NCBI GenBank assembly: GCA_025603075.1
Contig: MU626419.1
Span: 1 to 44,734 of the forward strand
Length of the DNA: 44,734 nucleotides
Direction: 5' to 3'
Source: Neoconidiobolus thromboides FSU 785
Taxonomy: Eukaryota > Fungi > Entomophthoromycota
Position 1 is the first letter of the stretch, and every line of letters begins with the position of its first letter. Made by a program: the position numbers and the translations under genes. Below, one piece after another: positions 23,278-44,256 of the stretch. The notes beneath the pieces were generated by a model. That model did no database searches and had not been told where the DNA came from. It saw only the letters and a program-made list of their open reading frames with translations.

Positions 23278-23946
23278 CTAAGCCTTTGGAGTATATTTTT
23301 TACGTTCTTGCGCGTATTTAAACTCTCCAACGACTTCCTTGACCTCAGGTATTTGAGAAATACGCTCAAAGTAACTAGAAAAATTAGGATATTGATCACG
23401 ATGCTCTTTCGTGTAAAACATACGATAGAGTCCATCCATAACACAAAACATAAATACATCTGCCAAAGTAATATGATTTCCAACTAAATACTCTTTTCCT
23501 TTGATTTCGTTATCAAGATAACTCAATGCTTTATCAATACGTGTATAAGCTGTTTCTTCGACTTTTTTATCATACTCAGCAAAGCCAAATAATGGCATAT
23601 ACAATTGAAGGGCTGGGGGAGTGATTTGAGTTGCACCGTAATAAGAATATTGAAGGATCTTAGCATAATCATTTTTATTAGAGCCTAATAGAGGGTTGTT
23701 TTCTTTTTGTGAAGCGATGTAAAAAGTAATGGCATCAGATTCTGTCAATAAAAGACCATCTTTAGATTCAAAAGCAGGTGCTTGACCTAATGGAAATTTA
23801 GCAATATATTCTTCAGTCTTATTATCAACACCGAATTTAAAGTTTGGATCGTAATCGATTTCAACATTGCTAAGCTTAGCTGCAATCAAAATTTTATTTG
23901 CTCTTTCGTAGTTTGGTATACTATGTAAGCGTCCTACTGCACCCAT
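23278..23946 (-). CDS. GST-fold protein of the EF1Bgamma N-terminal type, stand-alone, 222 aa, intronless
   Basis: Likely start MGAVGRLH (23946); KFPLGQAPAFE..DG..LTESDAI, KEYLVG.HITLAD; stops after RKKYTPKA with no EF1G C-terminal domain. Confidence 0.85.
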   Translation of the reverse strand: MGAVGRLHSIPNYERANKILIAAKLSNVEIDYDPNFKFGVDNKTEEYIAKFPLGQAPAFESKDGLLLTESDAITFYIASQKENNPLLGSNKNDYAKILQYSYYGATQITPPALQLYMPLFGFAEYDKKVEETAYTRIDKALSYLDNEIKGKEYLVGNHITLADVFMFCVMDGLYRMFYTKEHRDQYPNFSSYFERISQIPEVKEVVGEFKYAQERKKYTPKA

Positions 23947-24261
23947 TTTATTCTGTTTTTTGGAATAGTTAAATAAAAACAACACTTTTAAGAATTTATT
24001 CCGAAGTTAAAAATGATGACGAGTTATTCTTAATTGGTAAATAAATTTAAATAAAGGGGCTTTATTGGTTCACTTATACTCATAAACCCAAAAAATATTT
24101 TTATTTTAATGCAATGAAGCCATTAAGAATAAGCATTCCGATATATACTTCATTTGTATGGTTTATTAAAATAAAATTACAATTTTCATTTGCTCATTAA
24201 ATTATGCTTATGGTTATGTAAATAACAACTAAAAAATTGTTAAATTCATTTTCACTATTTT

Positions 24262-25056
24262 ATGGATAACCCAAACAACAATCCCAACTCATATCAACCC
24301 GATTCAAACCCACGAAAATCTGGAATACACGCCATCCTCAATACTGAAGATATGCTTTACAATCAATCCTATGATGTATCATCAAAACCCTTGAACTCAG
24401 TTCCAAATCAATATGAAGTAGACCCTAATTTACAGTCCATCCCAAATAAAAATATGCCTATAGAGCCAAATGAAGTTGCCAGAAGAGTAGCTCATCTTTC
24501 TATCAATTCCCCAAGAAACCGCCATCCACCAGCTATTTCTCCTTATCAATCTGGGTCTAGTCGCTGCGACTCACCAAACTCTAATCAAAGTGGAATGATA
24601 CGTTCTCATGGCAGTCTAACACCATACTATACTAGATCAACTGGTACAAACTCAAGGGATGAAATCAACTCGTCATCAGGCAAACCAAATGAGACAGCCA
24701 TTGAAAAGAGACAAAGACGCCTTATAAGAAATAGAATAGCAGCACAAGATTCACGCTTAAAGAAAAAGATGTATGTATCTGAGTTGGAAGAGAAAGTGAA
24801 ACGGTTAGAAAATGAGAACTTTAAGTTACATCATGATATTGTTATGTTGAATGATAAGCTACAGAATGGGGTTGTAATTAATGAGATCGATCAGGAAACT
24901 ATTACTGCAAACCATCATCAGCCTTTATTACCGCCCGATGTTAGGAAATTTTCTATACCAGAACATTTATTGCCTCCTCGTCCTCTATCTACTCCACCTG
25001 TTTCAACTAAGGAGGGGAAATATAAGGGAAACCGTGAGGATGATGAACAAAATTAA
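24262..25056 (+). CDS. bZIP transcription factor, 264 aa, intronless
   Basis: Basic region KRQRRLIRNRIAAQDSRLKKK followed by a heptad zipper (LEEKVKRLENENFKL); low-complexity N/P/S-rich N-terminus. Confidence 0.9.
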   Translation: MDNPNNNPNSYQPDSNPRKSGIHAILNTEDMLYNQSYDVSSKPLNSVPNQYEVDPNLQSIPNKNMPIEPNEVARRVAHLSINSPRNRHPPAISPYQSGSSRCDSPNSNQSGMIRSHGSLTPYYTRSTGTNSRDEINSSSGKPNETAIEKRQRRLIRNRIAAQDSRLKKKMYVSELEEKVKRLENENFKLHHDIVMLNDKLQNGVVINEIDQETITANHHQPLLPPDVRKFSIPEHLLPPRPLSTPPVSTKEGKYKGNREDDEQN

Positions 25057-25440: not shown

Positions 25441-26559
25441 TATCATTTATTACTTCTTTTTTTATACACCTTGATAAAAGATGTAGTATATAGGGGTGTT
25501 TTTTTTGGCTTTGTTACTTTTTCCACTTTTTAAGCACTATTTAAGTGGAAAGGTTGTTAGTAAAATTCTTAAACAAAAGAATATATCTCCATATGTTATA
25601 GAATCATTATAATTAGATTCTGATAATTCTGATCAAATACTGCCAACAGCTTCAAACAATGCTCTTTCGTTTTGCGGATCTTTCTCTTTGATTGACCGCT
25701 TCCGCTTGGTATAAATAGACTCAGCAGGGTTTAGAAACAGAGAATTTGTGTTCACTTACTTCAATGAGCTTTCTGACATTTGGATCTTTATTAGCATATT
25801 TTCTACGATTATTATTACATCCGATGTATTCATTTGAGCAAACTTGTCTATAATTGATTCAATAAATTGAAAAAAAGATTCTATCAAAAAAGTTTAGTTG
25901 AGTCTGATGTTTGATTATCCCATTTTTATTCATAACATCACAGTAATATATCTTTTGTTTTGAATCCAGGACCGAGGGAAGTAAGCTTTCCAACTTTAAT
26001 TTTCTCCTTTTATACTTGGTGCGCATTGTAATGGAAAATGTTGCTTTATTTATAAAAAATATCCTAAAGTCATCAAAAATTAATTTTTTATTTAGAAAAA
26101 TGCTAGTATAGTGAGATCTCATTTCTAGCATATCTAAACCATTATCCTGAGGGACTGAATTTTCATCTTGAATGGCTAAATAAATACACTTCAAAAAGCA
26201 ATCAAATGCCTTTGTACATCTTGATGTAGTTGATCGGCCTACATTTACCCTCATTTCCTTTAACGGATTCTATTTTATTGCTGGCGTCATACTTTTGCAA
26301 TCTTCATCAACCCAACTTCGTATAGGTTTCTCTTGACTATCTGATAGGGCTCTCGAATTAAGTCTTGGTACTGCTCTCGATTTTCTACTCTGACCTTTCC
26401 TCTCAGTATAATTTCTTATAATGTCATAAACAGTAGTTTTTTTTGTAGCCTGTTATTCTAAGAATATCTTTTATATTATTTTCCTTAATATAAACTTAAT
26501 AATCATTTTTCTCACTTCATTATTCATACTAAACTTTTCTTTCGGGTAATCGATGTCAT
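25441..26559 (-). pseudogene. IS630/Tc1-like transposase-derived paralogue D, pseudogene, interrupted by MITE copy 8
   Basis: Broken frames give TTVYDIIRNY, RSWVDEDC, FFINKATFSITMRTKYK, HQTQLNFFD, FLNPAESIYTK, KEKDPQNERALFEAV and, after the MITE, ILHLLSRCIKKEVIND; several stops and frameshifts. Confidence 0.85.
25491..25591 (-). mobile_element. MITE copy 8, inserted in the coding region of pseudogene D
   Basis: TA(25489-90)-TAGGGGTG...ATATCTCCA-TA(25592-93); both flanks align to the H-M-L codons of paralogues A-C. Confidence 0.9.
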
Positions 26560-27073
26560 TTGAACTTAAAAAAAAGCATATAGCGGTTGGACTTTTTAGA
26601 TTGTTTTTAATAGAAAGTACCCAATTCATTAACTATTGAAAACTAGAAATCTATCCTAAAATTAATTTGATGATTTCATTTGAAGGCTAAGAACTTGATT
26701 TCTCGGATAATTGGCTGTGAAAAAAGTAAAATCAAATAGTGTTATATTTTCTGTTGGAAATATTGTATTGAGTTTCAAGTGATATTTTCTACCAAGACTT
26801 CAGCTACTAATTTAAAAATCAAAATTTGATAAATTGAGCTCCACAAAAAATGGGCAGTATATTGGAGCAGAAAATATCACTACCGCTATTGGTTTGACTT
26901 TTACTTTATATATATCTATGTCCTATATTGCGCTACTTTGTAGATATAATTATATTACTAGCAAATTGCTGCAAAGTATTTTATTTATTGGAAAAAAGGT
27001 ATATTAAGAACATATTAAATTTACAACTAGAAGTTATAAAAAAAACCAAAAAATGAAAGTACAAATGTAATAT

Positions 27074-28099
27074 TTATTCATTAAGGATCTCTTCTTTTCT
27101 GATACATTTTGGTAGTAAACTAAGCATGTGTTCAAAATAACCTTTACAATCAACCTCTGAAATTTCTAGTAAAACTTGTTCTAAAACTTCAAATAATTCT
27201 TCCTCACTTTGTGGATCTTTTCCTCTGACTAACTGCTTCCACTTGGTATACATGGCCTCAACAGGATTTAAAAACTCAGAATAGGATGGTAAAGAAACTA
27301 AATTATACCCTTTTGATTCAATAAATTTCTTCATTGCTGGATCTTTGTCAATATGAGCACTGTCCATAATAATTGTCGCTTCTGATATGCCTTTTTTCTT
27401 TAATTCTTTGATAATTGATTTAATAAATTGATCAAATGACTCAATATCAAAAAGTTTTAATCGAGCCTCAAATTGAACTATTCCGCATTTACTCATAGCA
27501 CAACACATTGATATATTCTTTGTACGAAGTGCAGGAATAAACTTGTTTGACTTTGGTTTTTTAATTATGGCTTTTCTATTCCGACGCATTGAAACACTGA
27601 ATGTTGCTTCATTTATAAAAATAACTTTAGAGTCATCGAGTTTTTCTATGTTATCCACAAAATTATTGGCATAGATAGCTCTGTTTTCCAGAGTAGACGA
27701 ATCGTTATTTTGAGGAGCTAAATTAATACGTTTAAAAGAAAAATGAAAGGCCTTCAGATGTTCATTTATTAAAGATTCGCTTACATTTAATCCCATTTCA
27801 TCCTTCATTTTCTCTTTTATAGCTTTTATTGGGGTGTTGCAGTTTTCATCAATCCAAGAATGCATTATTTCTCTCTGGGATTCCGATATGGTCTTATCTT
27901 GAGGTACTGCTTTTTTTTCTTGAACTTTTAATTTCAATTTTTCAGGGCAATCTTCGCTATTTAGATATTTGTTTATAATTGCTTGAACTGTGGTACGTTT
28001 AAGGCCTGTTTGTTTGGCAATGTTTGTAGCGTTGGTTCCATCAGTATAAGAGTTGATGACACTTTTTCGGTCTTCGTCGTTAATTTTTTGGTATTTCAT
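27074..28099 (-). CDS. IS630/Tc1-like transposase-derived protein A, 341 aa, N-D34E triad
   Basis: Two HTH regions (IAKQTGLKRTTVQAII; IKAIKEKM..VSESLINEHL..FSFKRI), VIFINEATF (normally IDE), IIMDS, LPSYSEFLNPVE with 34 residues between D and E. Intronless; no flanking TIR seen by eye. Confidence 0.88.
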   Translation of the reverse strand: MKYQKINDEDRKSVINSYTDGTNATNIAKQTGLKRTTVQAIINKYLNSEDCPEKLKLKVQEKKAVPQDKTISESQREIMHSWIDENCNTPIKAIKEKMKDEMGLNVSESLINEHLKAFHFSFKRINLAPQNNDSSTLENRAIYANNFVDNIEKLDDSKVIFINEATFSVSMRRNRKAIIKKPKSNKFIPALRTKNISMCCAMSKCGIVQFEARLKLFDIESFDQFIKSIIKELKKKGISEATIIMDSAHIDKDPAMKKFIESKGYNLVSLPSYSEFLNPVEAMYTKWKQLVRGKDPQSEEELFEVLEQVLLEISEVDCKGYFEHMLSLLPKCIRKEEILNE

Positions 28100-28299
28100 T
28101 TTGAGAAGTAAATGACGAATGAAACAAAAGTTTAAAAAAAATCACTTATTGCACTTTATTTTGACATGGTTTTCTGACCAAAATAGTTTTGGTTGGCTGG
28201 TTTTAAAGGGTTAAAAAGTTTATGCTATTTTCTCCTAAAATATTTGAAGATAATCTCCTCTCTATTATTAGCTCTCGTATTTGACTTTAAACTAGAAAC

Positions 28300-29251
28300 A
28301 TGTCATCAACGGACAGAGCGGCCAGTTTAGTATCCGAATGCTTACTTAAAGGCATGATAATGACCACACAAATATGCCCAGATTGTCCAGTAAATTTATT
28401 ATATTATTAAAACCATTTTACTAACTGGTATTGAAGTGCCCTTTGATGAGAGACAGAAAAACAAAGGTGTTGCACTGTCCAGTATGTGAAGAGGAAAAAA
28501 AATTAGGCACGAAAGAAGAGGAAAACTTACAAATTGAAGATATAGTAACAGAAAAAGGGGAAACTTTATCTCCTGAGACGGTTAATAGAGAAGATGATTT
28601 AGAAGCTAATGGAAATAATAAGAAAAGAAGAGACGAAATAAGTGAAACAATTGGAGCAAAACTACTTCAGGGATGGGCACTTTTAGATACTTTATGTCCT
28701 AATAGCAAATGCCAAGGGGTAAGTTTACAATAGTTATTTTTAAATTAGTATTAATTGAAATAGATTCCATTAGTCAGAAATAAAGAAAAGCATAGTTTAT
28801 GTGTAAGCTGTGGAACGCAATACATTTTGGAAAAGGATTACGACGAAAAAATACATGGAGCAAAAAGGAACCTATCTGAAGCTACAGCTAAACCAAAAGA
28901 CGCTGGTGACTTGAGGAAGATGGAGTATAAAAAAAAGGTATTTATTTCCGTATCAATAAAAGCGTTTTTTGATATTTTATATAGTTGAGCTTACCAAATA
29001 CTACATCAAAGTCAATAGAAGTAAAGTCATCTAAAGATAGTTTTAGTAGTCCACAGTATTCTAACTTAAAAGGATCATTTTCGCATAACATTTCTTCGAC
29101 AGAAAAGATAGCTATAGAAAAAATTAATTCACTTAATGACAGATTATCCCAAAGTAATAATATAATTGAGATAGAAAATTTAGCCAAAGCTTTATTAGCT
29201 TTACAAAAATTAGTGGAAAATACAATGACATTAAATAGCGATACAAGATAA
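28300..29251 (+). CDS. SSSCA1: SSSCA1/ZNRD2-like zinc-ribbon protein (Auto_anti-p27 domains), 4 exons
   Basis: SLVSECLLKGMIMTTQICPDC..PLMRDRK..HCPVC and second repeat ISETIGAKLLQGWALLDTLCP..C..VPLVRNK..LCVSC; C-terminal helix EIENLAKAL. Confidence 0.85.
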
Positions 29252-29366
29252 ACAGATTTTGAGTTTTGTTATTATACTTTAATAAATGAAATAAAATTCA
29301 TGACTTTTGGACTCAAGTTTAACACTTTACAGTTCTTTTGTTTAATTAAGTTATTGACTCTATAAT

Positions 29367-29760
29367 TTAATGGACTTTAGTTGGCTTATTTGAGACCTTA
29401 TTATTTTCTGAAGGCAAATTAATATCTTATCTCACAGTTAAATCCAAAATAGCTTTAGCCTGTTGATGGTCATGGATCACAAGCTCCATAACTTCTTGAA
29501 AGCTACCATTATCAGATTGCATCTAGTCTAAACATAAATTTTATCAAATACTAAAGTACAATAGATTACTTATTTAAAATAATACGCTCTTGCACTGAGT
29601 AGTGAGATAGCTATGTCATTTTTAGATACAAGGGCAATGGACCTTCAATTTAGTTTAATAATGCTAAAGGTAGAACAGAGGCTATCAACTAATTATAAAT
29701 TCATTGCTAAAATGACAAGGCGTAGTGTGTAACATTTGCTAAAACCATTGGCTATGCTTT
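29367..29760 (-). pseudogene. Decayed duplicate of the 3' part of RRP41 (unit 1)
   Basis: Translates SFQEVMELVIHDHQQAKAILDLTVR*..SNKPTKVH* vs intact [34 protein letters not shown]; homology continues through the intron into the upstream exon. Confidence 0.85.
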
Positions 29761-30020
29761 TTAGTTCCTGTATTAACTATGGTTTTTTTATGTTTTAAGT
29801 TATGAAATACAAAAATGATGCTGTATATCATTTTATATTTACTTTTTATTTCTTAAATTTATGCAATAATGCTTTTAAACATAGCTATCCTATTTACGCA
29901 AGGCTGATTAAAGCTTATTATTAACAAAAAATAAGTGTAGCCTAAAGACACATTGTAAAACAAAGGTATCAAAACAGAAAATAATAATCATGATAACAAC
30001 ACAAAAGTATTAATCAAATG

Positions 30021-31103
30021 TTATTCATCAATTATCTCCATTCTTTGTAAACATTTTGGTATAAAGCTTAACATATGCTCATAAAACGACTTGCAGTCGG
30101 CATTTGTTATTTCTGACCAAACATTGTTAACAGTCTCAAACAATTCTCTCTCATTTTGCGGATCTTTTTCTCTGATTAACTGCTTCCACTTGGTATAGAT
30201 GGACTCAGTAGGATTTAGAAACAGTGAGTTTGGCGGTAAACAGATCAACCTGTGGCCGCTTGCTCCGATTAGTCTTCTAATACTTGGATTGTTATCAACA
30301 AATACGCTATCCATAATTATTGTCGCTTCTGTTATATTGATTTGAGTAAACTTAAGGATGACTACTTGAATAAATTGATGAAATGATTCCTCATCAAAAG
30401 AATGTAACTGAGTCTGATGCTCAACTATTGCATGTTTATTCATAGCGCAACATAACAAAATGTTTTTTGTATTGAATCCAGGGCCAGTAACAGGAAACTT
30501 TTTATTTATAATATCTTCTTTTTTATATTTTGTACGTGTTGTAATACAAAAAGTTGCTTCATTTATAAAAAACACTTTAGAATCATCAAGTCTTGCTATT
30601 TCACTAACAAAAATACCAACATAAAAAGCCCTCATTTCTAGCGTAGAGAAATCACTTTTTTGGGCAACCAGATCATTACTTTCATCAGTACTTTTTTTTT
30701 TGTGGTGATTTGACCCACTATTTTGATCAGCAGAACTTATACGCTTAAAAGAGTAGTTAAAATCTTTCATACGTCTATGTATACCTGTTATGCCTAAGTC
30801 TATATTCTTTTCATCCTTCAGTTTTTTTGTCATTGTATTTAATGATATGGTGCAGTCTTCATCAACCCAAGCTTGTATAATTTCACTTTTAGAATCGACA
30901 ATTCGTTTTCTAGGACCTAGCTCTGCTTTTTTCTGTTTTTGTTGTCGTCTATAATCCCCTCCATCAAGATATTTTTTTATAATATTGTGAACAGTCCTAC
31001 GCTTAAAACCCATCACTTTGGCAATTAGCCTTGGGCAAGATCCATTAATATAGGAATCGACGATCCTTTCTCTGTCTTCATTGCTAATAAGATTATATCT
31101 CAT
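30021..31103 (-). CDS. IS630/Tc1-like transposase-derived protein B, ~360 aa, N-D34E triad
   Basis: Likely start MRYNLISNEDRERI (31103; the ORF track extends it to 31175); VFFINEATF, IIMDS, LPPNSLFLNPTE (D-34-E); 21-aa in-frame insertion relative to A and C. Confidence 0.88.
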   Translation of the reverse strand: MRYNLISNEDRERIVDSYINGSCPRLIAKVMGFKRRTVHNIIKKYLDGGDYRRQQKQKKAELGPRKRIVDSKSEIIQAWVDEDCTISLNTMTKKLKDEKNIDLGITGIHRRMKDFNYSFKRISSADQNSGSNHHKKKSTDESNDLVAQKSDFSTLEMRAFYVGIFVSEIARLDDSKVFFINEATFCITTRTKYKKEDIINKKFPVTGPGFNTKNILLCCAMNKHAIVEHQTQLHSFDEESFHQFIQVVILKFTQINITEATIIMDSVFVDNNPSIRRLIGASGHRLICLPPNSLFLNPTESIYTKWKQLIREKDPQNERELFETVNNVWSEITNADCKSFYEHMLSFIPKCLQRMEIIDE

Positions 31104-31311
31104 TTTATATATTGAACTATTGTTTAAATTATTAATGATGTCAAAAAATAATTGCCTATCATTTTTCAAATACATAGAGAACTAAGGTCAAATTGTTTTT
31201 GGTTGGCTAGTTTTGAATTTTGAAAAATGCTATATGACTTTGCCCTTTTATGCTAACTTTGCCTTAAGATTAATATTTTCAATTTTTCTAAACAAAACTA
31301 TACTTAAAAGT

Positions 31312-32300
31312 AGCTCAATAACAGATAGAATAAAAAGTTTTTATCTGAATGTTTAATCAAAGACAAAACAATGACCCAATGAATATTTCAAAGTCATTTG
31401 GTTAGCATAACAAACAAATCAAATCAGGCTACTATGTGACATTAAAGTGTCCTTTGATATGAGGTAGAAAAACAAAAATATTGCGCTTTGCATTGTCTGA
31501 CAGAGATAAAAAAGAATAGACATAAAAGGAGAAAATTATGGAAGCTGAAGATAAAGCCAGAAAGAGAAAGAATTGTTACACTTACTAGTTAAAGAGATGG
31601 TAAGTTAAAGGAAAGTTGACCTAACAGGAAATGAAATGGCATGAATGAAATATGTCGAACCAAATTACTTTAAACACAAGCGGTGTTGCACACTTTATAC
31701 TCTAATAACAAATATCAAGAGGTAATAATGTACATTAATTTGAAAATGATAATTAACTAAATATATCCTCCACTAGCTAGAAATAAAGAGAAGCATAGAT
31801 TATATATGAGCTATGAAACAAACTACGTTTCAAAAAAGACTCATAATGCAACAGTCCATACGCATGAATAAACCTACCTGAAATTCCAGATAAAACACAA
31901 AATAAAAGCGACTAAAAAGAGTTGGTATATAAAAGGGAGGTGTTATGGAGATATCGACTAAATATTTTTATATACAAGGGTGTTTTTTTTGTTTCATTTA
32001 TTTCTCCATTTTTTAAGCACTATTTAAGCGGAAAAATTGTTAGTAGAATTCTTAAACACAAATACATCCCCATATCTTGTGTAGTAAAATTTCTAATGCT
32101 ATACTAAAGCCAATAGAAAAAGGCCCACCTAAGAATGTTACTTAAAAGGGTCCTTTCCAAATACCATTTCCTTGACAGGAAAACCACAAACGAAGAAAAA
32201 TATAATTGTTAAGCAATAACTCTTTATTATATAGCAATGTATCTGAGATAGAGCATTTAAAGTAAACTCTATTAGATAACAAAGAAAACGATATAAAATA
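31312..32300 (+). pseudogene. Decayed duplicate of SSSCA1 (unit 2), with MITE copy 9 inside
   Basis: attaaagtgtcctttgatatgaggtagaaaaacaaaaatattgcgc (31441) vs intact attgaagtgccctttgatgagagacagaaaaacaaaggtgttgcac (28430); 5' and 3' parts also align; no open frame. Confidence 0.8.
31975..32072 (-). mobile_element. MITE copy 9
   Basis: TA-CAAGGGTG..TTTTAAGCACTATTTAAGCGGAAAAATTGTTAGTAGAATTCTTAAACACAAATACATCCCCA-TA. Confidence 0.88.
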
Positions 32301-32427
32301 CAGCGGTATTAAATAATTATTTAGATTAAACAGACTTTTAAAATTATATCATTATTCTTTAATAAAATACCGAGGCTTAAAATTGTATTTATATCTGTTA
32401 TCTTTAGTTTATCTATTTAACTATGCC

Positions 32428-32850
32428 ATTAGCTCTGAGGCTTAACGAATTTATTTGGACTTTTTCTACTCCTTAACTTTTACTGCAATCAACTTAATAT
32501 CAAATTTCACACTGAGACACAATATACTTTTAACTAGTGTTGGTATTAACGGATTTCAAGCTTTATGACCTCCTAAAAGCTATCATTATCTATCTCAATT
32601 ATGACCAAAAGATAATATAGGGATGTATTTTTTGTGTTTAAAAATTTTATCAAAAAATTTTTCACTCAAATAGCGCTTAAAAGATGGAAAAGGTGATGAA
32701 GCCAAAAAAACGTCCACATATAGTGCTAAGCATTACTCTGTCTTTATTTTTGAAATTATGAGTTTTAAATGGGAATATGTGATAGCTATTGTTGCTGCTG
32801 TAAATTGTAGAGGCCTCTTTGGTTTACTTGAGCCGTGCTAAACAGCTAGA
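32428..32850 (-). pseudogene. Decayed duplicate of the 3' part of RRP41 (unit 2), split by MITE copy 10
   Basis: caagctttatgacctcctaaaagctatcattatc (32557) vs intact caagctccattacttcttgaaagttatcattacg (35829); tgatagctattgttgct (32779) vs gagacagctaccgttacc (35956). Confidence 0.7.
32618..32718 (+). mobile_element. MITE copy 10
   Basis: TA-TAGGGATGTATTTTTTGTGTTTAAAAATTTT..CTCAAATAGCGCTTAAAAGATGGAAAAGG..AAAAAAACGTCCACA-TA. Confidence 0.88.
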
Positions 32851-33110
32851 AAAAGTAAGCTGTCAACAACTTGCGGTGGTTCAGTTTAAATAGATAAGTT
32901 ATTGAATTGTGCTATAACTACAAAGAATTGTGCTAACATTATATTTACTATCCATATACATTCGATTTTATATTAAAATCATCCTTTTAAAATCACCTGT
33001 TTTTGTAGAATTATCATCAAAAGACAAATACAACATAATAGATCGAAATCTGAAAAATGGAACTTTCAAATAACTAAAAATTAAATGACAATGAAACCAT
33101 AAATACATAT

Positions 33111-34133
33111 TTATTCATAAAGTACTTCTTCTTTTCCTATACATTTAGGCAAAAAATCGAGCATACGCTCATAGAAATCTTTACAATCAGTGTGAGTTAT
33201 TTCTGATAAAGCACTGTTGAAAACATTATATAATTCATCTTCATTTTGTGGACCATTTGCCCTGACTAATTGTTTCCATTTAGCATACATATATTCAATA
33301 GGATTTAGAAACAAAGAATAAGGTGGTAAGCAAATTAAGGTGTGATCGCTTGCTTCAATGGATTCTTTGATCTTTAGATCTTTTTCAATGTACTCATGAT
33401 CCATAATTATCACTGCTTCTTTAATATTCTTTTGAGTAAGTTTAAAAAGAATTGATTTAATAAATTGATAAAATGATTCAGTACTGAAGCGCTTTGGTTG
33501 AGTTTGCCATTCAATAATTTCGGTTTTATTCATACCACAACATATCGATACGTTTTTTTTACGGAGCATATTGTTAAATGGATCAACTTTTATTTTTTTC
33601 TTAGTTATTCTATTAATTGTACGCATTGTAATGTTGAATGTTGCATCATTTATAAAAATAACTCTAGAGTCATTAAGCTTCAATATGTCATTTATGAAGT
33701 TATTGGCATAAAAAGCTCTAAATTCTAAAGTAAGGGTGTCATTGTTTTGAGATGCTAAATTGATACGTTTGAAAGAATAATTAAAGTCATTTAAGCTTCT
33801 GCTTATAATGTCTGCGCTTACTTTGATCTCTATTTCATTCATCAATTTCTTTTTTATTGCATTTATTGACATAGTGGAATCTTCATCAACCCAGGACTGA
33901 ATCATTTTCCTTTGGGATTCTGGCATAATTTTCTTCTTCATTTCTCCTCCTTCTCCCCTGCTTGCTTTTATAGTATAATCCTCTCCATCAATATATTTCT
34001 TTATAATAGTATAAACAGTCCTAGGCCTAAAGCCCATTATTTTAGCAATTTCTTGTTGACGCGATCCATTGATATAGGAGTCAACAATCCTTTCCCTGTC
34101 TTCATTACTTATACGTTTCGGCTTCGATTTCAT
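33111..34133 (-). CDS. IS630/Tc1-like transposase-derived protein C, ~340 aa, N-D34E triad
   Basis: Likely start MKSKPKRISNEDRERI (34133; the ORF track extends it to 34181); VIFINDATF, IIMDH, LPPYSLFLNPIE (D-34-E); HTH IAKIMGFRPRTVYTII. Confidence 0.88.
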   Translation of the reverse strand: MKSKPKRISNEDRERIVDSYINGSRQQEIAKIMGFRPRTVYTIIKKYIDGEDYTIKASRGEGGEMKKKIMPESQRKMIQSWVDEDSTMSINAIKKKLMNEIEIKVSADIISRSLNDFNYSFKRINLASQNNDTLTLEFRAFYANNFINDILKLNDSRVIFINDATFNITMRTINRITKKKIKVDPFNNMLRKKNVSICCGMNKTEIIEWQTQPKRFSTESFYQFIKSILFKLTQKNIKEAVIIMDHEYIEKDLKIKESIEASDHTLICLPPYSLFLNPIEYMYAKWKQLVRANGPQNEDELYNVFNSALSEITHTDCKDFYERMLDFLPKCIGKEEVLYE

Positions 34134-34577: not shown

Positions 34578-35560
34578 TATATCATCTACAGACACAGTAA
34601 TCAATCCAGTATTAAAATTACTACTTAGAGGTATGTTAATAGTCTTATAGACATGTCCAAATTGTTTAATAAGTCAATTACAATATTGAAATCAGCTTTT
34701 TAACAGGAGTTAAGATGTGCTTTGAAGCAAGATAGAAGAACAAAAATAATAAACTGCATAGTACATAAAAAGACGAAAGCTTGCGAGTTGAAGATAAATT
34801 GCCAGAAAAAACATGTTTGTCTGACTTAGTAGTTAAATAGGTGGTAAGTTAGAAGCTAATAAAATATTAAAAAAGGAAGAGATGGAATAATTATACTTGA
34901 AGCCAACCTACTTCAAGAATGAACACTATTTGGCGCCTGATGCTCTAATAGTGAGTATCGAAGGGCAAATAACAGCGTATTGTAAAATATGAGGATATAT
35001 TTTTTTGTTGAAAAATTTTACTAATAGCCTTTCCACTCAAATAGTGCTTGAGAAATGGAAGTGATGAAACCAAAAAAAAATCCCATGTGCTAGGGTTGAT
35101 TAAAACATATTCCCCCTTTTAGAAATAAGGAGAATTATACTTAATGTATAAGCTGTAAAACAATAATTTTTAGAGAAGGATTGTGATGGGAAAATGCATC
35201 GATCAAAAAAAACTTAGCTGAAAACACAATTAAATTAAAAAATGTTGGCGATGTGAAAGAGGTGGAACATAAAAAAGGCCCTTTTTAAAATAGTTTGAGT
35301 TATTCTATAATACTTTCTACAGCAAAATGTAAATAATGCTATACCAAAGCCAACATAAAAAAATCATATAAAACACTTAATAGCTCATAACGTTTTGACT
35401 CAAAAGGCTCATTTTCTGGTAGCATTTCTTTGAAAGAAAAAACAATTGTAAGAGAAATAATTTACTGAGCGAAAGATTATCATTTTGTAGTATACATTTG
35501 AAATAGAGAGCTTAGCTAAAGCTTCATTAGCTTTATAAAAATCAATAGAAAACATATACA
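34578..35560 (+). pseudogene. Decayed duplicate of SSSCA1 (unit 3), with MITE copy 11 inside
   Basis: ctacttagaggtatgttaatagtcttatagacatgtccaaattg vs intact ttacttaaaggcatgataatgaccacacaaatatgcccagattg; gaaatagagagcttagctaaagcttcattagctttataaaaatc (35500) vs gagatagaaaatttagccaaagctttattagctttacaaaaatt (29168). Confidence 0.8.
34990..35085 (+). mobile_element. MITE copy 11
   Basis: TA-TGAGGATATATTTTTTTG..TTTCCACTCAAATAGTGCTTGAGAAATGGAAGTGATGAAACCAAAAAAAAATCCCA. Confidence 0.85.
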
Positions 35561-35712: not shown

Positions 35713-36825
35713 TTAGTAAGTTTTGGTTGGCTTATTTGAATTCTTCTTATTGTTTTCTGCAAGTAAAGTAGTATTTGATCTCACGGTTGAATCCAAAATC
35801 TCTTTAACTTGTTGACAACCATGAATCGCAAGCTCCATTACTTCTTGAAAGTTATCATTACGCAGTTTAGATTCAATCTATATAAAAATTCAATATTAAC
35901 ACTAGAATTTAGCCCATTCTTTACCTGTAACAATATAACTTTTCCACTCAATGGTGAGACAGCTACCGTTACCTCTGGCGACTGGGAGGATCTCTCTTCA
36001 ATTTGATTAATATCTAAAATGGGTTAATTATTTTTCAATATTAGCTTATTTAATACATACCAAGCACTGCAGTATTTTCTATAAAACCTGCAGAAGTAGC
36101 GCATACATAATCACTCATTGGTACACCAGCATGGATTAAAGCAAGTGTTGCTGCATTAATAGAGGCTTGGAGGATACCTGTTTTTATAAATATTTGAATA
36201 TAAAAAAATGAATTCATTTAAATTTACCGCCATCATCCTGTAAAATCTGTAAAAAAATGTCAATCTGTGAACGGGATGATAATTGGGTAAGGATGATGGG
36301 CTCAAACGTTTGTTTAACTGATTGGGCCATCTCCATAATGCGCCTAAAAGAATTAATTTCATGTTTCAAATACAATAAAAGATGTTAAATACTTGTCATT
36401 TTTACTACGCTTTTTACGTTCACTGGTACTGAATGGAGAAACATTAATTTCTACATTAATAAATGCTCTATCATGTAAAATGGCTGATCTTTTTCTTGGC
36501 TATTTAGAATTTATTTGGATTTAATCTAATTCTAATTGATTAAACATGTCCAATTTTACCTCTCTAGGTCCATAAACTGTTGCTAACACTTTAGTGTTTC
36601 CCAATTCTAAATAACTTGATCCATCAGCATCTCCTAATACTCCTACTTTAGACACTAGTTTTCTTAGCTCATTTGGTCGCCTGCCATCAACTCTTAAACC
36701 TAAATTTTAGTTGGTATTATACTTGAGACATTAATTATAGTACCTTCAATACTCAATAGTTCAACTCTGGACTAAAATCGAGGTTAGTTTTATGTAATCT
36801 TATATTTAAATTTTAAATCAACCAT
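35713..36825 (-). CDS. RRP41: Exosome core subunit Rrp41/Ski6 (RNase PH fold), multi-exon
   Basis: M|[10 protein letters not shown]|[92 protein letters not shown]; stop at 35713-35715. Confidence 0.95.
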
Positions 36826-37307
36826 TTTCAAATCAAGTAAAAACTAAAAAGTTGAAAAATTAGATTGAGCTTTGATTATTTTTAGATGAAATTTAAGAAT
36901 TTATAGCATCAATAGTAAAATATGAAGAAGCATAAAGAAATATGGATTGTACATGAAATTCAAGTAACTTTCATACTTTGTTGCTTTCATAAATATTATA
37001 ACTATCTACTATCTATTTTACGAAATATAAAGGCGTAATTTTAATTTGCTACATACAAAAACATTGGTTCATGTACTTTGTTTAATAATGAATAATAATT
37101 TATATTCAAAATGTTGAATATTTTGATTTAATATTAGACATTGAGTCATGAATTAAATATTACTTATTATGAATATTATCATTAAACAAGAAAACATGAT
37201 TATATATCGTGCATAAACTTGATTATGAAATTATTTTTGATTTAGTTTTAATTTAGATTAATAGTATCAAAGCTAATGAAATACAAATAATTTAGAATAT
37301 TTATATA

Positions 37308-37405
37308 TGGGGATGTATTTTTTGTCCAAGAATTTTTCTAATGAATTTTCCACTCAAATAGCGCTTGAAAAATGGGCAAAGTAGGAAAACCAGAAGAAAT
37401 ACTTA
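37308..37405 (+). mobile_element. MITE copy 12
   Basis: TA-TGGGGATGTATTTTTTGTCCAAGAATTTT..TTTTCCACTCAAATAGCGCTTGAAAAATGGG; right end decayed. Confidence 0.85.
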
Positions 37406-37463
37406 TATATTTATAAACTTGTTAAATTGGTATTTGTTTTTTATTTTCTTAAAAATTATTTTA

Positions 37464-37563
37464 TGGAAGTGTTTTTCTTGACTTCATTACTTTTTCCATT
37501 TTTAAGTGCTATTTAAGTGGAAAATTTGTTAGTAAAATTCTTGATCACAAAAATACATCCTCT
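37464..37563 (-). mobile_element. MITE copy 13
   Basis: TA-TGGAAGTG..CATTACTTTTTCCATTTTTAAGTGCTATTTAAGTGGAAAATTTGTTAGTAAAATTCTTG..AAAAATACATCCTCT-TA. Confidence 0.88.
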
Positions 37564-37758
37564 TATAGTTATTATTTTGAAATATTCAATAAAAGTTTCA
37601 GTTTACTTATAAACCTTTCAAAGAATTTTATGACGTTGGTTTTTTAGTGAAATAAAATTTTAATAGCTAAACCTAAGGATATTGTTGAACTCTATAATAC
37701 TTTATTTTTCATCAGTTAAGTTGATCATATCTTATATTATACTTATTTGAAATATATA

Positions 37759-37859
37759 TGGGGATGTATTTTTGTGTTTAAGAATTTTACTAACAAATTT
37801 TCCGCTTGAATAGCGCTTAAAAGGTGGAAAAAGTAATGAAATCAAAAAAATCATCCCCA
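37759..37859 (+). mobile_element. MITE copy 14 (close to consensus)
   Basis: TA-TGGGGATGTATTTTTGTGTTTAAGAATTTTACTAACAAATTTTCCGCTTGAATAGCGCTTAAAAGGTGGAAAAAGTAATGAAATCAAAAAAATCATCCCCA-TA. Confidence 0.93.
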
Positions 37860-38537
37860 TATGTTAAATATTAAAAAAATTATTTTTTATCACATTTTTT
37901 AAGTAATATTATAAAGGATACAAATTATACTTTCTGTTATAAAGAAGTAGGTTTATCTCTTAGATGCCTATCATTGGTCTAACTCCTGCTTTTCGCTCTT
38001 TATTTCCCTTCAGCCCACACTTACCTACGCATTTATATTTATTTCCTAGCCTTCATAAAGAAAAAACCTGCAAAATTTGCTCCTTCGAAGCTTGAAAGAT
38101 TAATAAAAACCACTCCAACAGAGCTTAGTAGCAACTGCCATTCAAACATCAATAAATGACAACACTTTTTTAATTGGTATTTAATCAAAAAAAATTAATT
38201 TTATATTATATGAATGGACAAAATAACAATAATAAACATACACAGGCTATATTTGTCAAACTATCAAACAGTATAATGGAGTATATTAGCCTAAAACAAT
38301 AAAGTTTTAGCTCAACAAATATTATTATAATGCATGTGGTTAAATTTAAGTTAATACAACTTGCTTAATAATATGAATCTACCTTCTTGTTCTGGAATAG
38401 TTAAAGTTCAATGTTTGAATTTGGATTATAAATCAGCTTTCTAATTGGCTACTAATTTGTAATTTTCGATAAGATTACATCACATTAATCTTATAAAAAA
38501 TAAATTAAATAGAAACTCAAAATTTTTAACAATAACC

Positions 38538-40154: not shown

Positions 40155-40197
40155 ACATTCTATAAAAAAATTGACTACTTTATTTTTCTTTAGTATT

Positions 40198-40297
40198 TGG
40201 GAATATATTCTTTTACTTAATAATTTTACTAACAATTTTTCTACTCAAATAGTGCTTAAAAAATGAAAAAGTAATGAAACCAAAAAGAATAGCCACA
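40198..40297 (+). mobile_element. MITE copy 15
   Basis: TGGGAATATATTCTTTTACTTAATAATTTTACTAACAATTTTTCTACTCAAATAGTGCTTAAAAAATGAAAAAGTAATGAAACCAAAAAG; both ends decayed. Confidence 0.83.
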
Positions 40298-41817
40298 ATA
40301 TTGATTTTTATTTATACTAAATCCAAAACTTTTACATTTATCGAAAGAACATACTGAAGCTATAGTTGATAATAACCCTACTTGTTAGTTTTTATTTCTT
40401 GTTTCCCTTAAACTATTAATTTTATATATTACTTGATTAAGTTTTATTATTAATATTAAACTTTGATAATTTATCTTTTCTTTCTTCTATCTTATCATAA
40501 AGTTCCATAAACTCTGAGTTACTATGAATGGTTGTTGAAATTGATCTAGATGAGTTATAACGTTTATATAATGAGCTTCTCTCTACTGTATCAAAATTTT
40601 TAAAAGTTCCATTTCGAAGTTTAGTTATTAGTTACAAAAGCTTAGATTTTGTTTTTATTTTAATAGAAAACAAAGTCAAAGAACTATATATTTAGATGTT
40701 ATATACTATAAATCCATTAAACATTTAATAAAAATAATACAGAGTATATAATTAAAAAAATCAATTATTTACTAAAAATAAATCAATTAAAATAAGTTCT
40801 TTAAGTTAAATTTGACTAATCATGTTAAGGACTTATAAATTTAAAAACTTCAAAGCTGCATTGGTTTTTAAATAAATTCTGAAACCGATTTTGACATCCC
40901 CATTTTTGATTATACCAAGTTTAGCTATCTACGAATTTATAACCAATTTTTTTGTAATTTTTTTATTAATAGCAAAATGTCTTTACAATGCAATAATAGT
41001 TATTATTATTACTTGTTTGAAATTCAATTAAAGCTGACTTGCTTGTATTCATATTCGGACTTTAGTAACGTTCCATTTTTATCTCATTATAATACTCGAT
41101 ATGAGAGTACATTACATAATTGATAAGCTCCAAGGTGATGTTAGCTATAATCCTTTTACTCACGAAGATATTTGAGTGCAACGTTTCATAGACATAATAC
41201 TATAAAGCATATAAAGTATTTCTTAAGTAGCAGGTTTATTAAAAAAATTGTTTACTGGTAGCAGAGACTCTTTATATTTAGAAACTCTTTATAAAGAACA
41301 TTGAGATTGAGGTTTACTTGTTATATAAATGGTTACACTTTATTTAAAATATTAACTGATAAATATAAAGTATTTATCAATTATTAGCTTTTTTATCAAC
41401 ATTATAATTTGATTGTGAAAATTACCGTCAATATTGGTTATGAAGAATCACTAGCTGCTCTTATTTCGTTTTTAATCAACATTTAATCAACATATTACAC
41501 TTATCAATACTAAATTCGAATTATCAAATTACTTTCGGTTCTTGGGATCATTTTGTTATGAATCAATAATGAATTACAATATATACATTTCTAAGGGCTA
41601 TGTCAAATTGTTTTAGTTTGTTGTATTATCATATCATTGCTAATATAGCAATCTATAACTTGACTATAACTTCAGGTTTCTTGTAAATATCAGCTTTATC
41701 TGTTCAGCAGTTTGAAAGTTACTTATAATATAATTGGTTAGATTTTCTAAAAACATCATAAAAAATAACCTTTTAAAAAAACCATTTTAAAAAATTCATC
41801 TTTTGCTGTTGAATACG

Positions 41818-43194
41818 ATGCTTAAATTTGAGGATTTACCAGATATTATTTTAGAGGAGATATTTGATCTAATACCCCCATATGGATTAATTAAGCTTAG
41901 TACTTTGAATAAATTTTTTAATAAATTTATTTCTAGGATGATATTTAATAAAAAGTGTAACTTAGTTCCTGAATTCTATATTGATGATAAATTTCGAGAT
42001 GAATTTATAACTAGGAACGGAAACAATATGAATCATTTAAGTGTAGTTTCCAATAACAATATCCGATATCTTAAATTGTGTCCAAATATTTCTAGTCTAT
42101 CTATACATTGTTATAATAATTTGAACGAATTGGGTCTGGCAATAGCTTCAAATTCTTTCCCTAGATTAAGAACTCTTAAACTAAAAATATCATGTGAAAA
42201 ATCTGAATTTATAACTTTTTTACTAACCATTAAGCCTACATTGTATAATATTGAAAATCTTCATATAGAGCGTTTTAGATATAGACTTGATGAGACTATT
42301 GGCTATCTCAATACAAATAAGCTTGATGAAGTTGTTAGTTATCTCAATCCAAACAAGCTTAAAATATTGAAAATTTGTTCAGATTTCAGCTCCATTGTAG
42401 ATCTAGACTCATTAAAACAACTAGATGAATTAAAAAGTTTAAAACTGTTATCAGTAACGTGTTATAAGCGGTTATATAATCGTGTCTTTCATGATATAGT
42501 ACTTTATGAATCTCCAACCAAATTTGACGTAACTTTGAAGTATTTCAATGGGTACTTAGAACAACATAAAAACTTATCAAGGTTTAATGAGATTTACATA
42601 GATACAGTCAATGGAGAGTTCGATTTTAGAACACTTAATAAAATAGATAAACAAAAAATTAGAGCTTTAGGTTATATCAATCACAAAATGCTTGAAACTA
42701 TTGATTTGAAATCATTAGTGAATTTGAAGAAAGTAAGTATAACGGAAAAAGATGAACTACCAATTATTATAGGCTCAATTTCTTCAGTATCAACAATCCA
42801 CACTATTGAACTATGTTTCGTTGAACAACCCATTAAACCTCACAAATTAGTTTCGCTGAGAGATTTTGATTTAAGGAAAATTAAGCATACCAATACTTAT
42901 TACCACAAGCGACCTTTAAATAAGCAACATTTCATCCAATGTAGCTTTATAAAGCAGTTAACGTTTATTAATTGCTTTGTATCATTACAAGATATTTTTG
43001 ATGCTTTATATTTATTTCCTAACATTGAGTCGGTTACATTCAAGAAATTCACTTTTAAAAAATATAAAGAAAAAATAGTATACAGCCTTAGTAGTCCTAT
43101 ATTATTTCAATTTATCGAAGTTCGGTTTGAATATAACAAAACAGAAACTATGAATATTTTAAACAAGGATCCATTGATTACATTAATAAAATAG
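41818..43194 (+). CDS. F-box protein with degenerate LRR/RNI-like repeats, ~458 aa, intronless
   Basis: Likely start MLKFEDLPDIILEEIFDLIP..LIKLSTLNKFF (F-box pattern), then repeated LxxLxL/I units (LRTLKLKI, IENLHIE, LKILKI, LKSLKLL). Confidence 0.8.
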   Translation: MLKFEDLPDIILEEIFDLIPPYGLIKLSTLNKFFNKFISRMIFNKKCNLVPEFYIDDKFRDEFITRNGNNMNHLSVVSNNNIRYLKLCPNISSLSIHCYNNLNELGLAIASNSFPRLRTLKLKISCEKSEFITFLLTIKPTLYNIENLHIERFRYRLDETIGYLNTNKLDEVVSYLNPNKLKILKICSDFSSIVDLDSLKQLDELKSLKLLSVTCYKRLYNRVFHDIVLYESPTKFDVTLKYFNGYLEQHKNLSRFNEIYIDTVNGEFDFRTLNKIDKQKIRALGYINHKMLETIDLKSLVNLKKVSITEKDELPIIIGSISSVSTIHTIELCFVEQPIKPHKLVSLRDFDLRKIKHTNTYYHKRPLNKQHFIQCSFIKQLTFINCFVSLQDIFDALYLFPNIESVTFKKFTFKKYKEKIVYSLSSPILFQFIEVRFEYNKTETMNILNKDPLITLIK

Positions 43195-44192: not shown

Positions 44193-44256
44193 TTGGGATA
44201 TGTTTTTATATTTAAGGATTTCATTAGCAAATTTTCCACTCAAACAACACTTGAAA
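44193..44256 (+). mobile_element. MITE copy 16, right part missing
   Basis: TA-TTGGGATATGTTTTTATATTTAAGGATTTCATTAGCAAATTTTCCACTCAAACAACACTTGAAA, then homology stops. Confidence 0.75.

What the first reader, a model, noticed from the sequence alone, without database searches (positions are those of the whole stretch)
25441..34133. Tandem array of four IS630/Tc1-derived genes all lacking the first catalytic Asp (N-D34E): candidate domesticated, nuclease-dead family
Seen: A (27074-28099), B (30021-31103) and C (33111-34133) are intact, intronless, co-oriented and strongly diverged; D (25441-26559) is a pseudogene. All have Asn where IS630/Tc1 enzymes have the first catalytic Asp (FINEATF, FINEATF, FINDATF, FINKATF vs consensus FIDE). 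A-C keep the second D, the FLNPxE glutamate at exact 34-residue spacing, and both N-terminal HTH regions. I see no TIRs around them. Known: D-to-N at a DDE residue typically abolishes cleavage, and catalytically dead transposase derivatives have been domesticated elsewhere (e.g. CENP-B, PiggyMac-like partners in Paramecium). Inference: the D>N change predates the amplification, and these proteins are kept as DNA-binding or scaffold factors rather than as mobile elements. I know of no description of such a family in these fungi.
Basis: partly seen in the sequence, partly recalled or inferred. Interest (0 to 1): 0.85.

Follow-up and report, generated by a model that had tools for sequence, protein, structure and literature searches.

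The report
Domesticated dead Tc1-like transposase gene array
A fungus related to Neoconidiobolus keeps and transcribes a tandem set of genes descended from a Tc1-type jumping-gene enzyme that share one change at its cutting site, so they are most likely host genes and not mobile DNA: a new example of a known phenomenon.

Summary
A (27074-28099), B (30021-31103) and C (33111-34133) are intact, intronless, co-oriented Tc1/IS630-type genes. D (~25600-26530) is a pseudogene.

**Catalytic site.** In a profile alignment of the 150 best relatives, the Asn of FINEATF falls where 127 have the first catalytic Asp. The second Asp and the Glu, 34 residues apart, are kept. An AlphaFold model (pLDDT 88) matches Mos1, SETMAR and Sleeping Beauty.

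**Not mobile.** No terminal inverted repeats flank the genes. The array is a ~3-kb segmental triplication that also copied a ZNRD2/p27-like gene.

**Selection.**
- The two extra ZNRD2 copies are full of stop codons, while A-C stay open.
- Neutral simulation left 0 of 2000 frames open.
- Pairwise dN/dS is 0.26-0.47.

**Conservation.** Neoconidiobolus thromboides has a tandem array of the same Asn-bearing clade, beside a weak ZNRD2-like match. B pairs with one of its copies (support 100/98), so the change and part of the amplification predate the species split.

**Expression.** RNA contigs cover A, B and C. A related organism expresses 93-95% identical counterparts, one polyadenylated.

**Verdict.** This is a domesticated, probably catalytically impaired transposase family: a new member of a known kind. 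Function is untested. The scan had already noted this family on other contigs of this genome.

The parts
25600..26530 (-). Copy D: pseudogene of the same family (FINKATF kept; stops, frameshifts, second Asp lost)
   Evidence: still covered by RNA contigs
25487..25597 (.). ~100-nt MITE at the 3' end of D
27074..28099 (-). Gene A, 341 aa: paired-like double HTH plus DDE_3 core with an N163-D246-E281 triad
   Evidence: RNA contigs and a polyadenylated 95%-identical counterpart
28100..28299 (.). Shared divergent promoter region of A and the ZNRD2-like gene; holds a CCAAT-like motif at 28185-28206, repeated at 31195-31216 upstream of B
   Evidence: family D16; the promoter role is inferred
28300..29251 (+). 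Intact ZNRD2/SSSCA1 (autoantigen p27)-like gene, 270 aa, 3 introns; the passenger of the duplicated unit
   Evidence: introns skipped between 28389|28437, 28717|28763 and 28935|28983 in RNA contigs
30021..31103 (-). Gene B, 360 aa, N-D-E triad, with a 21-23 aa insert in the linker; pairs with N. thromboides copy L002:12370-13419
31440..31860 (+). ZNRD2-like pseudogene of unit 2 (stops, zinc-ribbon Cys lost); still transcribed and spliced at 31720-31774
31971..32711 (.). Two MITE copies in inverted orientation (31971-32078 and 32615-32711) between B and C
33111..34133 (-). Gene C, 340 aa, N-D-E triad (FINDATF)
   Evidence: RNA contigs in X1 and X5, and a 92.6%-identical counterpart in X6
34579..35553 (+). 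ZNRD2-like pseudogene of unit 3 (multiple stops), with a MITE at 34983-35088

Best explanation
A, B and C are host genes descended from one Tc1-like (IS630/Tc1/mariner, DD34E) transposase. That transposase lost its transposon ends and changed its first catalytic Asp to Asn before the window's species and Neoconidiobolus thromboides diverged.

The genes multiplied by tandem segmental duplication, not by transposition, and have been kept open by purifying selection acting on the whole protein.

The most likely mode of action (inferred, not shown):
- Each protein binds specific DNA through its paired-like double helix-turn-helix.
- It uses the remodelled RNase-H-like core for DNA or partner contacts and oligomerisation, not for cutting.
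- It therefore acts as a sequence-specific chromatin or transcription factor, or as an inhibitor of related transposases. The paralogues may work as hetero-oligomers.
For: **Shown**
- Pfam DDE_3 plus HTH hits.
- A confident model (pLDDT 88) whose best structural matches are Mos1, SETMAR and Sleeping Beauty.
- A profile match of the N-terminus to the SB PAI subdomain and Pax paired domains, and of D246/E281 to the DNDPKH and LNPIEN motifs of SB.
- Asn where 127 of 150 relatives have Asp.
- No TIRs.
- The ~3-kb unit includes a ZNRD2-like gene whose two extra copies are riddled with stops, while the three 340-codon transposase-derived frames have none.
- 0 of 2000 neutrally evolved copies stayed open.
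- dN/dS is 0.26-0.47 overall and similar in the HTH region and the core.
- N. thromboides has three more intact members, a five-copy co-oriented array and a weak ZNRD2-like match next to it.
- B and L002d are sisters at 100/98 support, and monophyly of the window copies is rejected.
- RNA contigs cover A, B and C together with spliced neighbours. A related organism has counterparts 93-95% identical, less diverged than its ZNRD2 counterpart (~10%). One ends in a poly(A) tail.

**Established knowledge**
- Asp-to-Asn at a DDE carboxylate abolishes catalysis in retroviral integrases and transposases (for example HIV-1 IN D64N).
Against: - No direct evidence of DNA binding, of lost nuclease activity or of any phenotype.
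- The pseudogene D is transcribed at similar depth, so transcription alone proves little.
- dS is saturated between paralogues. The close-counterpart test rests on 26 of 50 differences (12 synonymous, 14 not), and its p-value ranges from 0.002 to 0.06 depending on the assumed transition bias.
- The counterpart of C in the related organism carries a 1-nt length change in a T7 run. This is either a frameshift or an assembly error.
- D246, N278, P279 and E281 are invariant in the clade, and the conserved His five residues after D246 has become Asp or Glu. A purely non-catalytic role does not predict this.
Confidence: 0.75

Rival explanations
1. The proteins are still enzymes. The active site has been rewired, with Asn163 plus the new acidic residue at position 251 (formerly His) replacing the lost carboxylate. 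They nick, cut or join DNA at some target, alone or with a catalytically complete partner.
For: - D246, N278, P279 and E281 are invariant across a clade whose synonymous sites are saturated.
- The substitutions around the pocket (D163N, G166T, H251D/E, F284Y) are fixed, not scattered.
- The core is as constrained as the HTH region.
Against: - No DDE enzyme is known to work with Asn at the first position (general knowledge).
- The G-R...G loop after strand 1, conserved in 75-86% of relatives, is lost and modelled with pLDDT below 50.
- Model coordinates could not be read, so the position of residue 251 relative to the site was not measured.
Confidence: 0.1
2. The genes are transposon-derived repressors. 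Dead transposases that still recognise transposon ends, or co-assemble with an active transposase and poison it, are kept because they restrain a Tc1-like element or the abundant ~100-nt MITE. This is a special case of domestication.
For: - The multi-copy, fairly fast-evolving family (dN/dS ~0.3-0.5) fits an arms race.
- The window has 17 MITE copies, and the same MITE family sits in and beside the N. thromboides array.
Against: - No active Tc1-like partner was seen.
- MITE copies are about 75-88% alike, so the family looks old.
- MITE termini do not occur at the ends of A-C.
- An earlier scan report attributes the MITE to a Sola2 element, not Tc1 (s1-241640, not tested here).
Confidence: 0.1
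3. The copies are ordinary decaying relics of a transposon that happen to be open, with no host function.
For: - They are intronless.
- The public gene models apparently omit A and C and call only 87 aa of B.
- One array member (D) is dead, and so are several N. thromboides copies.
Against: - 0 of 2000 neutral simulations kept the frame open.
- The co-duplicated ZNRD2 copies decayed while A-C did not.
- Six intact members persist in two genera with a cross-species sister pair.
- dN/dS is below 0.5.
Confidence: 0.04

Closest known systems
SETMAR/Metnase (primate gene with a domesticated Hsmar1 mariner transposase domain)
   Same: - An ITm-superfamily transposase kept as a host gene.
- One catalytic carboxylate replaced by Asn, with the other two kept.
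- The DNA-binding HTH domain is retained.
- It is among the best structural matches to the model (TM by target 0.78-0.81).
   Different: - In SETMAR the third residue is changed (DDN), not the first.
- It is single-copy, fused to a SET domain and derived from mariner (DD34D).
- Here the genes are unfused, Tc1-like (DD34E), and present as diverged tandem paralogues in two fungal genera.
CENP-B, and fission-yeast Abp1/Cbh1/Cbh2 (pogo-derived)
   Same: A small family of transposase-derived, sequence-specific DNA-binding proteins in a fungus, paralogous and non-mobile. This is a model for how A-C might work.
   Different: - They derive from pogo, not Tc1-like elements.
- Their catalytic triads are largely degenerate, whereas here two of three residues and the NPxE motif are invariant.
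- Membership was not tested. Pfam CENP-B_N scores only E = 0.048 on C.
PiggyMac-like (PgmL) partners in Paramecium
   Same: Several catalytically defective paralogues of a domesticated transposase kept together under selection. This suggests hetero-oligomeric scaffolding.
   Different: - They belong to the piggyBac superfamily.
- They work with a catalytically active Pgm in programmed DNA elimination.
- No active partner or DNA-elimination process is known here.
Tc1/mariner-derived genes of Drosophila (CG14478, CG4570, cag, toy; PMC13548663)
   Same: - Same superfamily.
- Identified by the same criteria: no TIRs, conserved orthologues, purifying selection, expression.
   Different: - Per that abstract, each Drosophila gene kept either the DNA-binding module or the catalytic domain.
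- Here both modules are kept, and the genes form tandem arrays.
Active Tc1-like DD34E transposases (Sleeping Beauty, and the DDE-intact relatives P0003-P0015)
   Same: - Same domain order, paired-like HTH and DDE_3 core.
- 34-residue D-E spacing and the LNPIE motif.
- 28-36% identity to A.
   Different: - They have a complete DDE triad, the G-R...G loop and the His of the DNxxxH motif.
- Known active members such as Sleeping Beauty have TIRs and a TA target duplication.
- A-C lack all of these.

Membership tests
IS630/Tc1/mariner superfamily, Tc1-like DD34E transposase | DDE_3-type catalytic domain with an RNase-H-like fold | tested here: met
   Pfam DDE_3 scores 53.1, 32.4 and 50.8 bits against a cut-off of 28.6. 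The AF2 model (pLDDT 88) matches Mos1, SETMAR and SB at E = 1e-6 to 3e-11.
IS630/Tc1/mariner superfamily, Tc1-like DD34E transposase | N-terminal bipartite (paired-like) HTH DNA-binding domain | tested here: met
   HTH_SB, HTH_28, HTH_23 and HTH_32 hits. The family profile matches the SB PAI subdomain (E = 2e-9) and Pax5/Pax6 paired domains (E = 1e-8).
IS630/Tc1/mariner superfamily, Tc1-like DD34E transposase | Complete catalytic triad D, D, E | tested here: not met
   The first residue is Asn in A, B, C, D and all N. thromboides members, where 127 of 150 relatives have Asp.
IS630/Tc1/mariner superfamily, Tc1-like DD34E transposase | 34 residues between the second Asp and the Glu | tested here: met
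   D246 and E281 in A. The same columns are conserved in B, C and relatives.
IS630/Tc1/mariner superfamily, Tc1-like DD34E transposase | Terminal inverted repeats and a TA target duplication around the gene (a mobile unit) | tested here: not met
   Flank-versus-flank alignments are no better than shuffles. The repeat unit instead contains a host gene.
Domesticated (exapted) transposase gene | Immobile: no transposon ends; copies arise by host-type duplication | tested here: met
Domesticated (exapted) transposase gene | Orthologues at a conserved position in another species | tested here: met
   - N. thromboides has a co-oriented tandem array next to a ZNRD2-like hit.
- B and L002d are sisters at 100/98 support, with AU p = 0.0115 against species-specific clades.
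- Synteny rests on one weakly matching neighbour (E = 0.002-0.011).
Domesticated (exapted) transposase gene | Purifying selection on the coding sequence | tested here: met
   - dN/dS 0.26-0.47.
- 0 of 2000 neutral simulations stay open.
- The co-duplicated neighbour copies decayed.
- The close-counterpart test gives omega 0.28-0.50, p = 0.002-0.06.
Domesticated (exapted) transposase gene | Expression | tested here: met
   - RNA contigs cover A, B and C with spliced neighbours.
- A poly(A) end was seen in a related organism.
- Strand and protein were not shown.
Domesticated (exapted) transposase gene | A demonstrated cellular function | not testable with these tools
   Needs genetics and biochemistry.

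The most novel reading that the evidence does not exclude
The N-D-E proteins are not inert binders. They would be the protein half of a conserved two-part system whose DNA half is the ~100-nt MITE family.
- The MITE is kept at about 77-86% identity between two genera, although the N-D-E proteins of those genera are only ~50% identical.
- The paralogues would form hetero-oligomers on these dispersed sites, through their HTH domains and a rewired active-site pocket in which an acidic residue replaces the conserved His.
- They would regulate neighbouring genes, or carry out a limited DNA transaction such as nicking or programmed excision.
Probability: 0.08. Interest if true: 0.85.

Novelty: new member of a known kind. 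Interest (0 to 1): 0.55.

Why it matters
Domesticated transposases are well known, but few derive from Tc1-like DD34E elements, and I found none described in the early-diverging fungal lineages (Zoopagomycota).

This case has three unusual features:
- The family exists as arrays of old, diverged paralogues kept in two genera.
- The first catalytic residue is fixed as Asn, while the rest of the pocket is strictly conserved and specifically remodelled.
- A natural internal control sits in the same repeat units: the co-duplicated neighbour gene decayed.

It therefore offers a tractable system for asking what a transposase core is good for once it stops cutting.

It also matters for annotation. 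TE surveys probably count these genes as transposons, and the gene models seen here apparently omit A and C and call only a fragment of B.

Tried and rejected
- **Single-sequence phmmer of A against PDB.** It gave only chance cullin hits and weak SB matches. The profile search and the fold search replaced it.
- **Word-index homologue search.** It found a single protein. The exhaustive profile search was needed.
- **ORF 2272-3330.** It was tested as a possible fifth copy. It is an unrelated DUF4419 protein.
- **MITE copies as the genes' own TIRs.** The MITEs flanking C were considered. They belong to a dispersed family with 17 copies across the window. The terminal motif does not sit at the gene ends.
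- **Context of the nearest DDE-intact relative.** P0003 lies on a 1971-nt contig of an unnamed sample. Other relatives come from metagenomes or Anopheles. The source lineage of the ancestral element could not be named.
- **Full list of counterpart differences.** The read-laying tables are truncated (25 and 307 rows not shown), so only 26 of 50 differences in A could be classed.
- **Distance from residue 251 to the active site.** Model coordinates are not exposed.
- **Literature.** Searches found no description of this family. Muszewska et al. 2017 (PMC5751038) counted Tc1/Mariner as almost the only DNA transposons of Conidiobolus coronatus and discarded sequences lacking catalytic residues from their trees.


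Full report
**What is there**

The window is AT-rich (GC about 27%). Positions 25.4-36 kb hold four co-oriented minus-strand copies of one gene.
- A (27074-28099, 341 aa), B (30021-31103, 360 aa) and C (33111-34133, 340 aa) are uninterrupted.
- D (about 25600-26530) has at least five in-frame stops and two frameshifts. Its second catalytic Asp is lost, and a ~100-nt MITE sits at its 3' end.
- tblastn with A, B and C finds no further copy in the window.
- An ORF at 2272-3330 that I tested as a candidate is an unrelated DUF4419 protein.
- A, B and C are 46-50% identical in protein.

**Family and fold**

- All three hit Pfam DDE_3 above its curated cut-off and a set of HTH families.
- An exhaustive profile search of 1.84 billion representatives gave 6420 relatives, 173 of them at E below 1e-30.
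- An AlphaFold2 model of A built on 71 of these has mean pLDDT 88. It puts Asn163 in the first strand of the core, Asp246 at the end of a strand and Glu281 in a helix.
- Its best PDB matches are the Mos1 transpososome, the SETMAR/Metnase transposase domain and the Sleeping Beauty catalytic domain.
- The family profile aligns the MDN..H and LNPIE motifs with the DNDPKH and LNPIEN motifs of Sleeping Beauty. It aligns the N-terminus with the SB PAI subdomain and the Pax paired domains.
- The proteins are therefore Tc1-like, with a bipartite paired-like DNA-binding region and a DD34E-type core.

**The Asn**

I aligned the 150 best relatives to the family HMM.
- The column of A-Asn163 is Asp in 127 sequences.
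- Asp246 is Asp in 136, and Glu281 is Glu in 129.
- The FINEATF-type motif is confined to a small clade: A, B, C and proteins of Neoconidiobolus thromboides FSU 785.
- The next relatives, at about 36% identity, have the classical F(I/V)DE(V/A)GF.
- Outside the clade Asn is sporadic (5 sequences), usually alongside other lost motif residues.

The clade also shares other fixed changes around the pocket:
- Gly166 to Thr.
- Loss of the conserved G-R...G loop after the first strand, which is modelled at pLDDT below 50.
- The conserved His five residues after the second Asp replaced by Asp or Glu.
- Phe284 to Tyr.

Asp246, Asn278, Pro279, Glu281 and Trp287 stay invariant. An earlier first-stage note (s1-272493) had listed the His and loop changes, and one search confirms them.

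**Not a mobile unit**

- Aligning the 400- or 800-nt flanks of each gene against each other's reverse complement gives scores within the range of shuffled flanks.
- The inverted repeats reported by the repeat finder are copies of a dispersed ~100-nt MITE, with 17 copies spread over the window.
- Its terminal motif does not mark the gene ends.
- The DNA between the genes is itself repeated with a ~3.0-kb period, at 66-69% identity over hundreds of bases.
- That DNA holds a divergently transcribed ZNRD2/SSSCA1 (autoantigen p27) gene (Pfam PF06677).

The array is therefore a tandem segmental triplication of a two-gene unit, plus D.

**An internal control for selection**

The ZNRD2-like gene between A and B is intact: 270 aa, two zinc-ribbon motifs and three short introns, all removed in RNA contigs. 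Its copies in the other two units (31440-31860 and 34579-35553) carry many stop codons and have lost the zinc-binding cysteines. The three 340-codon transposase-derived frames in the same units have no stop at all.

| Test | Result |
|---|---|
| Neutral simulation, window base composition, 10% divergence per lineage | mean 7 stops; 0 of 2000 frames open |
| Neutral simulation, 17.5% divergence per lineage | mean 12 stops; 0 of 2000 frames open |
| Nei-Gojobori dN/dS, all 15 pairs of the six intact members | 0.26-0.47 (dS about 1 or more, so saturated and the ratio if anything overestimated) |
| Mean dN/dS, HTH region / linker / core | 0.37 / 0.32 / 0.36 |

An earlier first-stage note (s1-272267) had proposed that the passenger genes died. 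One search confirms it.

**A second species**

N. thromboides has three intact full-length members:
- L001:125-1141, 338 aa.
- L002:9683-10684, 333 aa, annotated only as a 227-aa protein.
- L002:12370-13419, 349 aa.

It also has decayed copies. Five copies form a co-oriented tandem array in L002, with a weak ZNRD2-like match (E = 0.002-0.011) just beyond it on the opposite strand.

A maximum-likelihood tree gives these results:
- The Asn clade has 100/100 support.
- B is sister to L002:12370-13419 at 100/98.
- Forcing A+B+C into one clade costs 28.8 log-likelihood units (AU p = 0.0115).

The Asn change, and at least part of the amplification, are therefore older than the split of the two species. 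The placements of A and C are not resolved.

**Expression**

Runs classed as RNA were laid on the region.
- In the run with no differences from the window (X1), one 4.1-kb contig covers A, the spliced ZNRD2-like gene and B. Another covers C and beyond. Coverage drops between D and A and upstream of B.
- Two further runs of the same or a very close strain agree.
- The contigs are unstranded and merge overlapping transcripts, so separate mRNAs are inferred, not shown.
- D is covered at similar depth, so transcription by itself does not prove function.

A run from a related organism (X6) holds counterparts of all three genes:

| Counterpart | Differences | Notes |
|---|---|---|
| A | 50 in 1050 nt | ends in a run of T, i.e. 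poly(A) on the coding strand, 14 nt after the stop |
| B | 51 in 743 nt | no gaps |
| C | 78 in 1048 nt | one extra T in a T7 run: frameshift or homopolymer error |
| ZNRD2-like gene | about 10% diverged | more than A, B or C (5-7.4%) |

Of the 26 listed differences in A, 12 are synonymous and 14 are not. This gives omega of 0.28-0.50 and p = 0.002-0.06, depending on the transition bias assumed.

**Interpretation**

*Shown*
- An immobile, tandemly duplicated, transcribed gene family of Tc1-like origin.
- It is under purifying selection over its whole length.
- It is shared by two genera.
- Asn is fixed at the first catalytic position and the pocket is remodelled.

*Inferred*
- Loss of cleavage activity. 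The basis is the general finding that Asp-to-Asn at a DDE carboxylate inactivates integrases and transposases.
- Action through sequence-specific DNA binding and oligomerisation, as in SETMAR or the CENP-B/Abp1 proteins.

*Caveat.* The invariance of the two remaining catalytic residues, and the new acidic residue at the former His, are not predicted by a purely non-catalytic role. I therefore keep a rewired-enzyme reading at about 10%, and a transposon-repressor reading at about 10%.

**The MITE**

- The MITE ends in TATGGGGATGT and its complement.
- It is very abundant in RNA.
- It also occurs in the N. thromboides loci at 77-86% identity, the same as within the window.
- Earlier scan notes disagree on its target duplication, and one follow-up names a Sola2 element as its parent (s1-241640). 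I did not test that. If it is right, it weakens the idea that these Tc1-derived proteins bind the MITE (s1-272385).

**Organism**

- The window is a whole 44,734-nt NCBI contig.
- Its closest named relative in the Asn clade is N. thromboides, at only ~47-51% protein identity for this family. The source is therefore another entomophthoralean fungus, probably of Conidiobolus in the broad sense. I did not establish the species.
- An earlier follow-up on this genome called it 'probably N. thromboides'. My hits do not support that, because the N. thromboides proteins are distinct and are not masked as the window's own.

**Novelty**

- Literature searches found no description of this family.
- A survey of fungal cut-and-paste transposons reported Tc1/Mariner as nearly the only DNA transposons of C. 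coronatus. It dropped sequences lacking catalytic residues from its trees (PMC5751038).
- Domestication of Tc1/mariner transposases is established elsewhere (for example PMC13548663), so this is a new member of a known kind.
- The scan has already reported the same family on other contigs of this genome, including a nine-member array (s1-247483).

Noticed in passing
window 1113-1227, 1843-1958, 8746-8852, 9038-9126, 9581-9704, 13985-14073, 14560-14670, 25487-25597, 31971-32078, 32615-32711, 34983-35088, 37305-37410, 37450-37572, 37736-37862, 40186-40289, 44190-44256, 44404-44509; also L002:8689-8785, L002:15070-15169 and six places in L003: A ~100-nt MITE with termini TATGGGGATGT / ACATCCCCATA has 17 copies in 44.7 kb and RNA word depth near 10,000. 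The same family is present in N. thromboides at 77-86% identity, as high as between copies within the window, although the N-D-E family proteins of the two species are only ~50% identical. Why the consensus is conserved across genera is unexplained.
   Followed up: partly
window 31440-31860 and 34579-35553 (+): Two pseudogene copies of the ZNRD2/p27-like gene are still transcribed. The first still has one intron removed (31720-31774, GT..AG).
   Followed up: partly
window 33593-33599: The expressed counterpart of gene C in a related organism (run X6) has T8 where the window has T7, inside the coding sequence. This is a frameshift if real, or possibly a homopolymer error.
   Followed up: partly
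window 27074-34133: The public gene models seem to call only an 87-aa fragment of B (P0090) and neither A nor C. In N. thromboides an intact 333-aa gene is annotated as 227 aa (P0002). The family is probably under-annotated because it looks like a transposon.
   Followed up: partly
window 28185-28206 and 31195-31216: A conserved 22-nt motif containing a CCAAT-like box (read on the minus strand) lies 86-92 nt upstream of the start codons of A and B, in the region shared with the divergent ZNRD2-like gene or pseudogene. A related copy is at 35719-35740.
   Followed up: no
window 30620-30700 (gene B): B carries a frame-preserving insert of about 21-23 residues, rich in Ser, Lys and Asn, in the linker between the HTH region and the core. 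It is absent from A, C and N. thromboides P0001.
   Followed up: no
window 2272-3330, 16673-17590, 23278-23985, 24262-25056, 41803-43194: The neighbouring genes are ordinary host genes: DUF4419, VID27 C-terminal domain, glutathione S-transferase, a bZIP factor and an F-box protein. The array sits in normal gene-dense DNA.
   Followed up: partly
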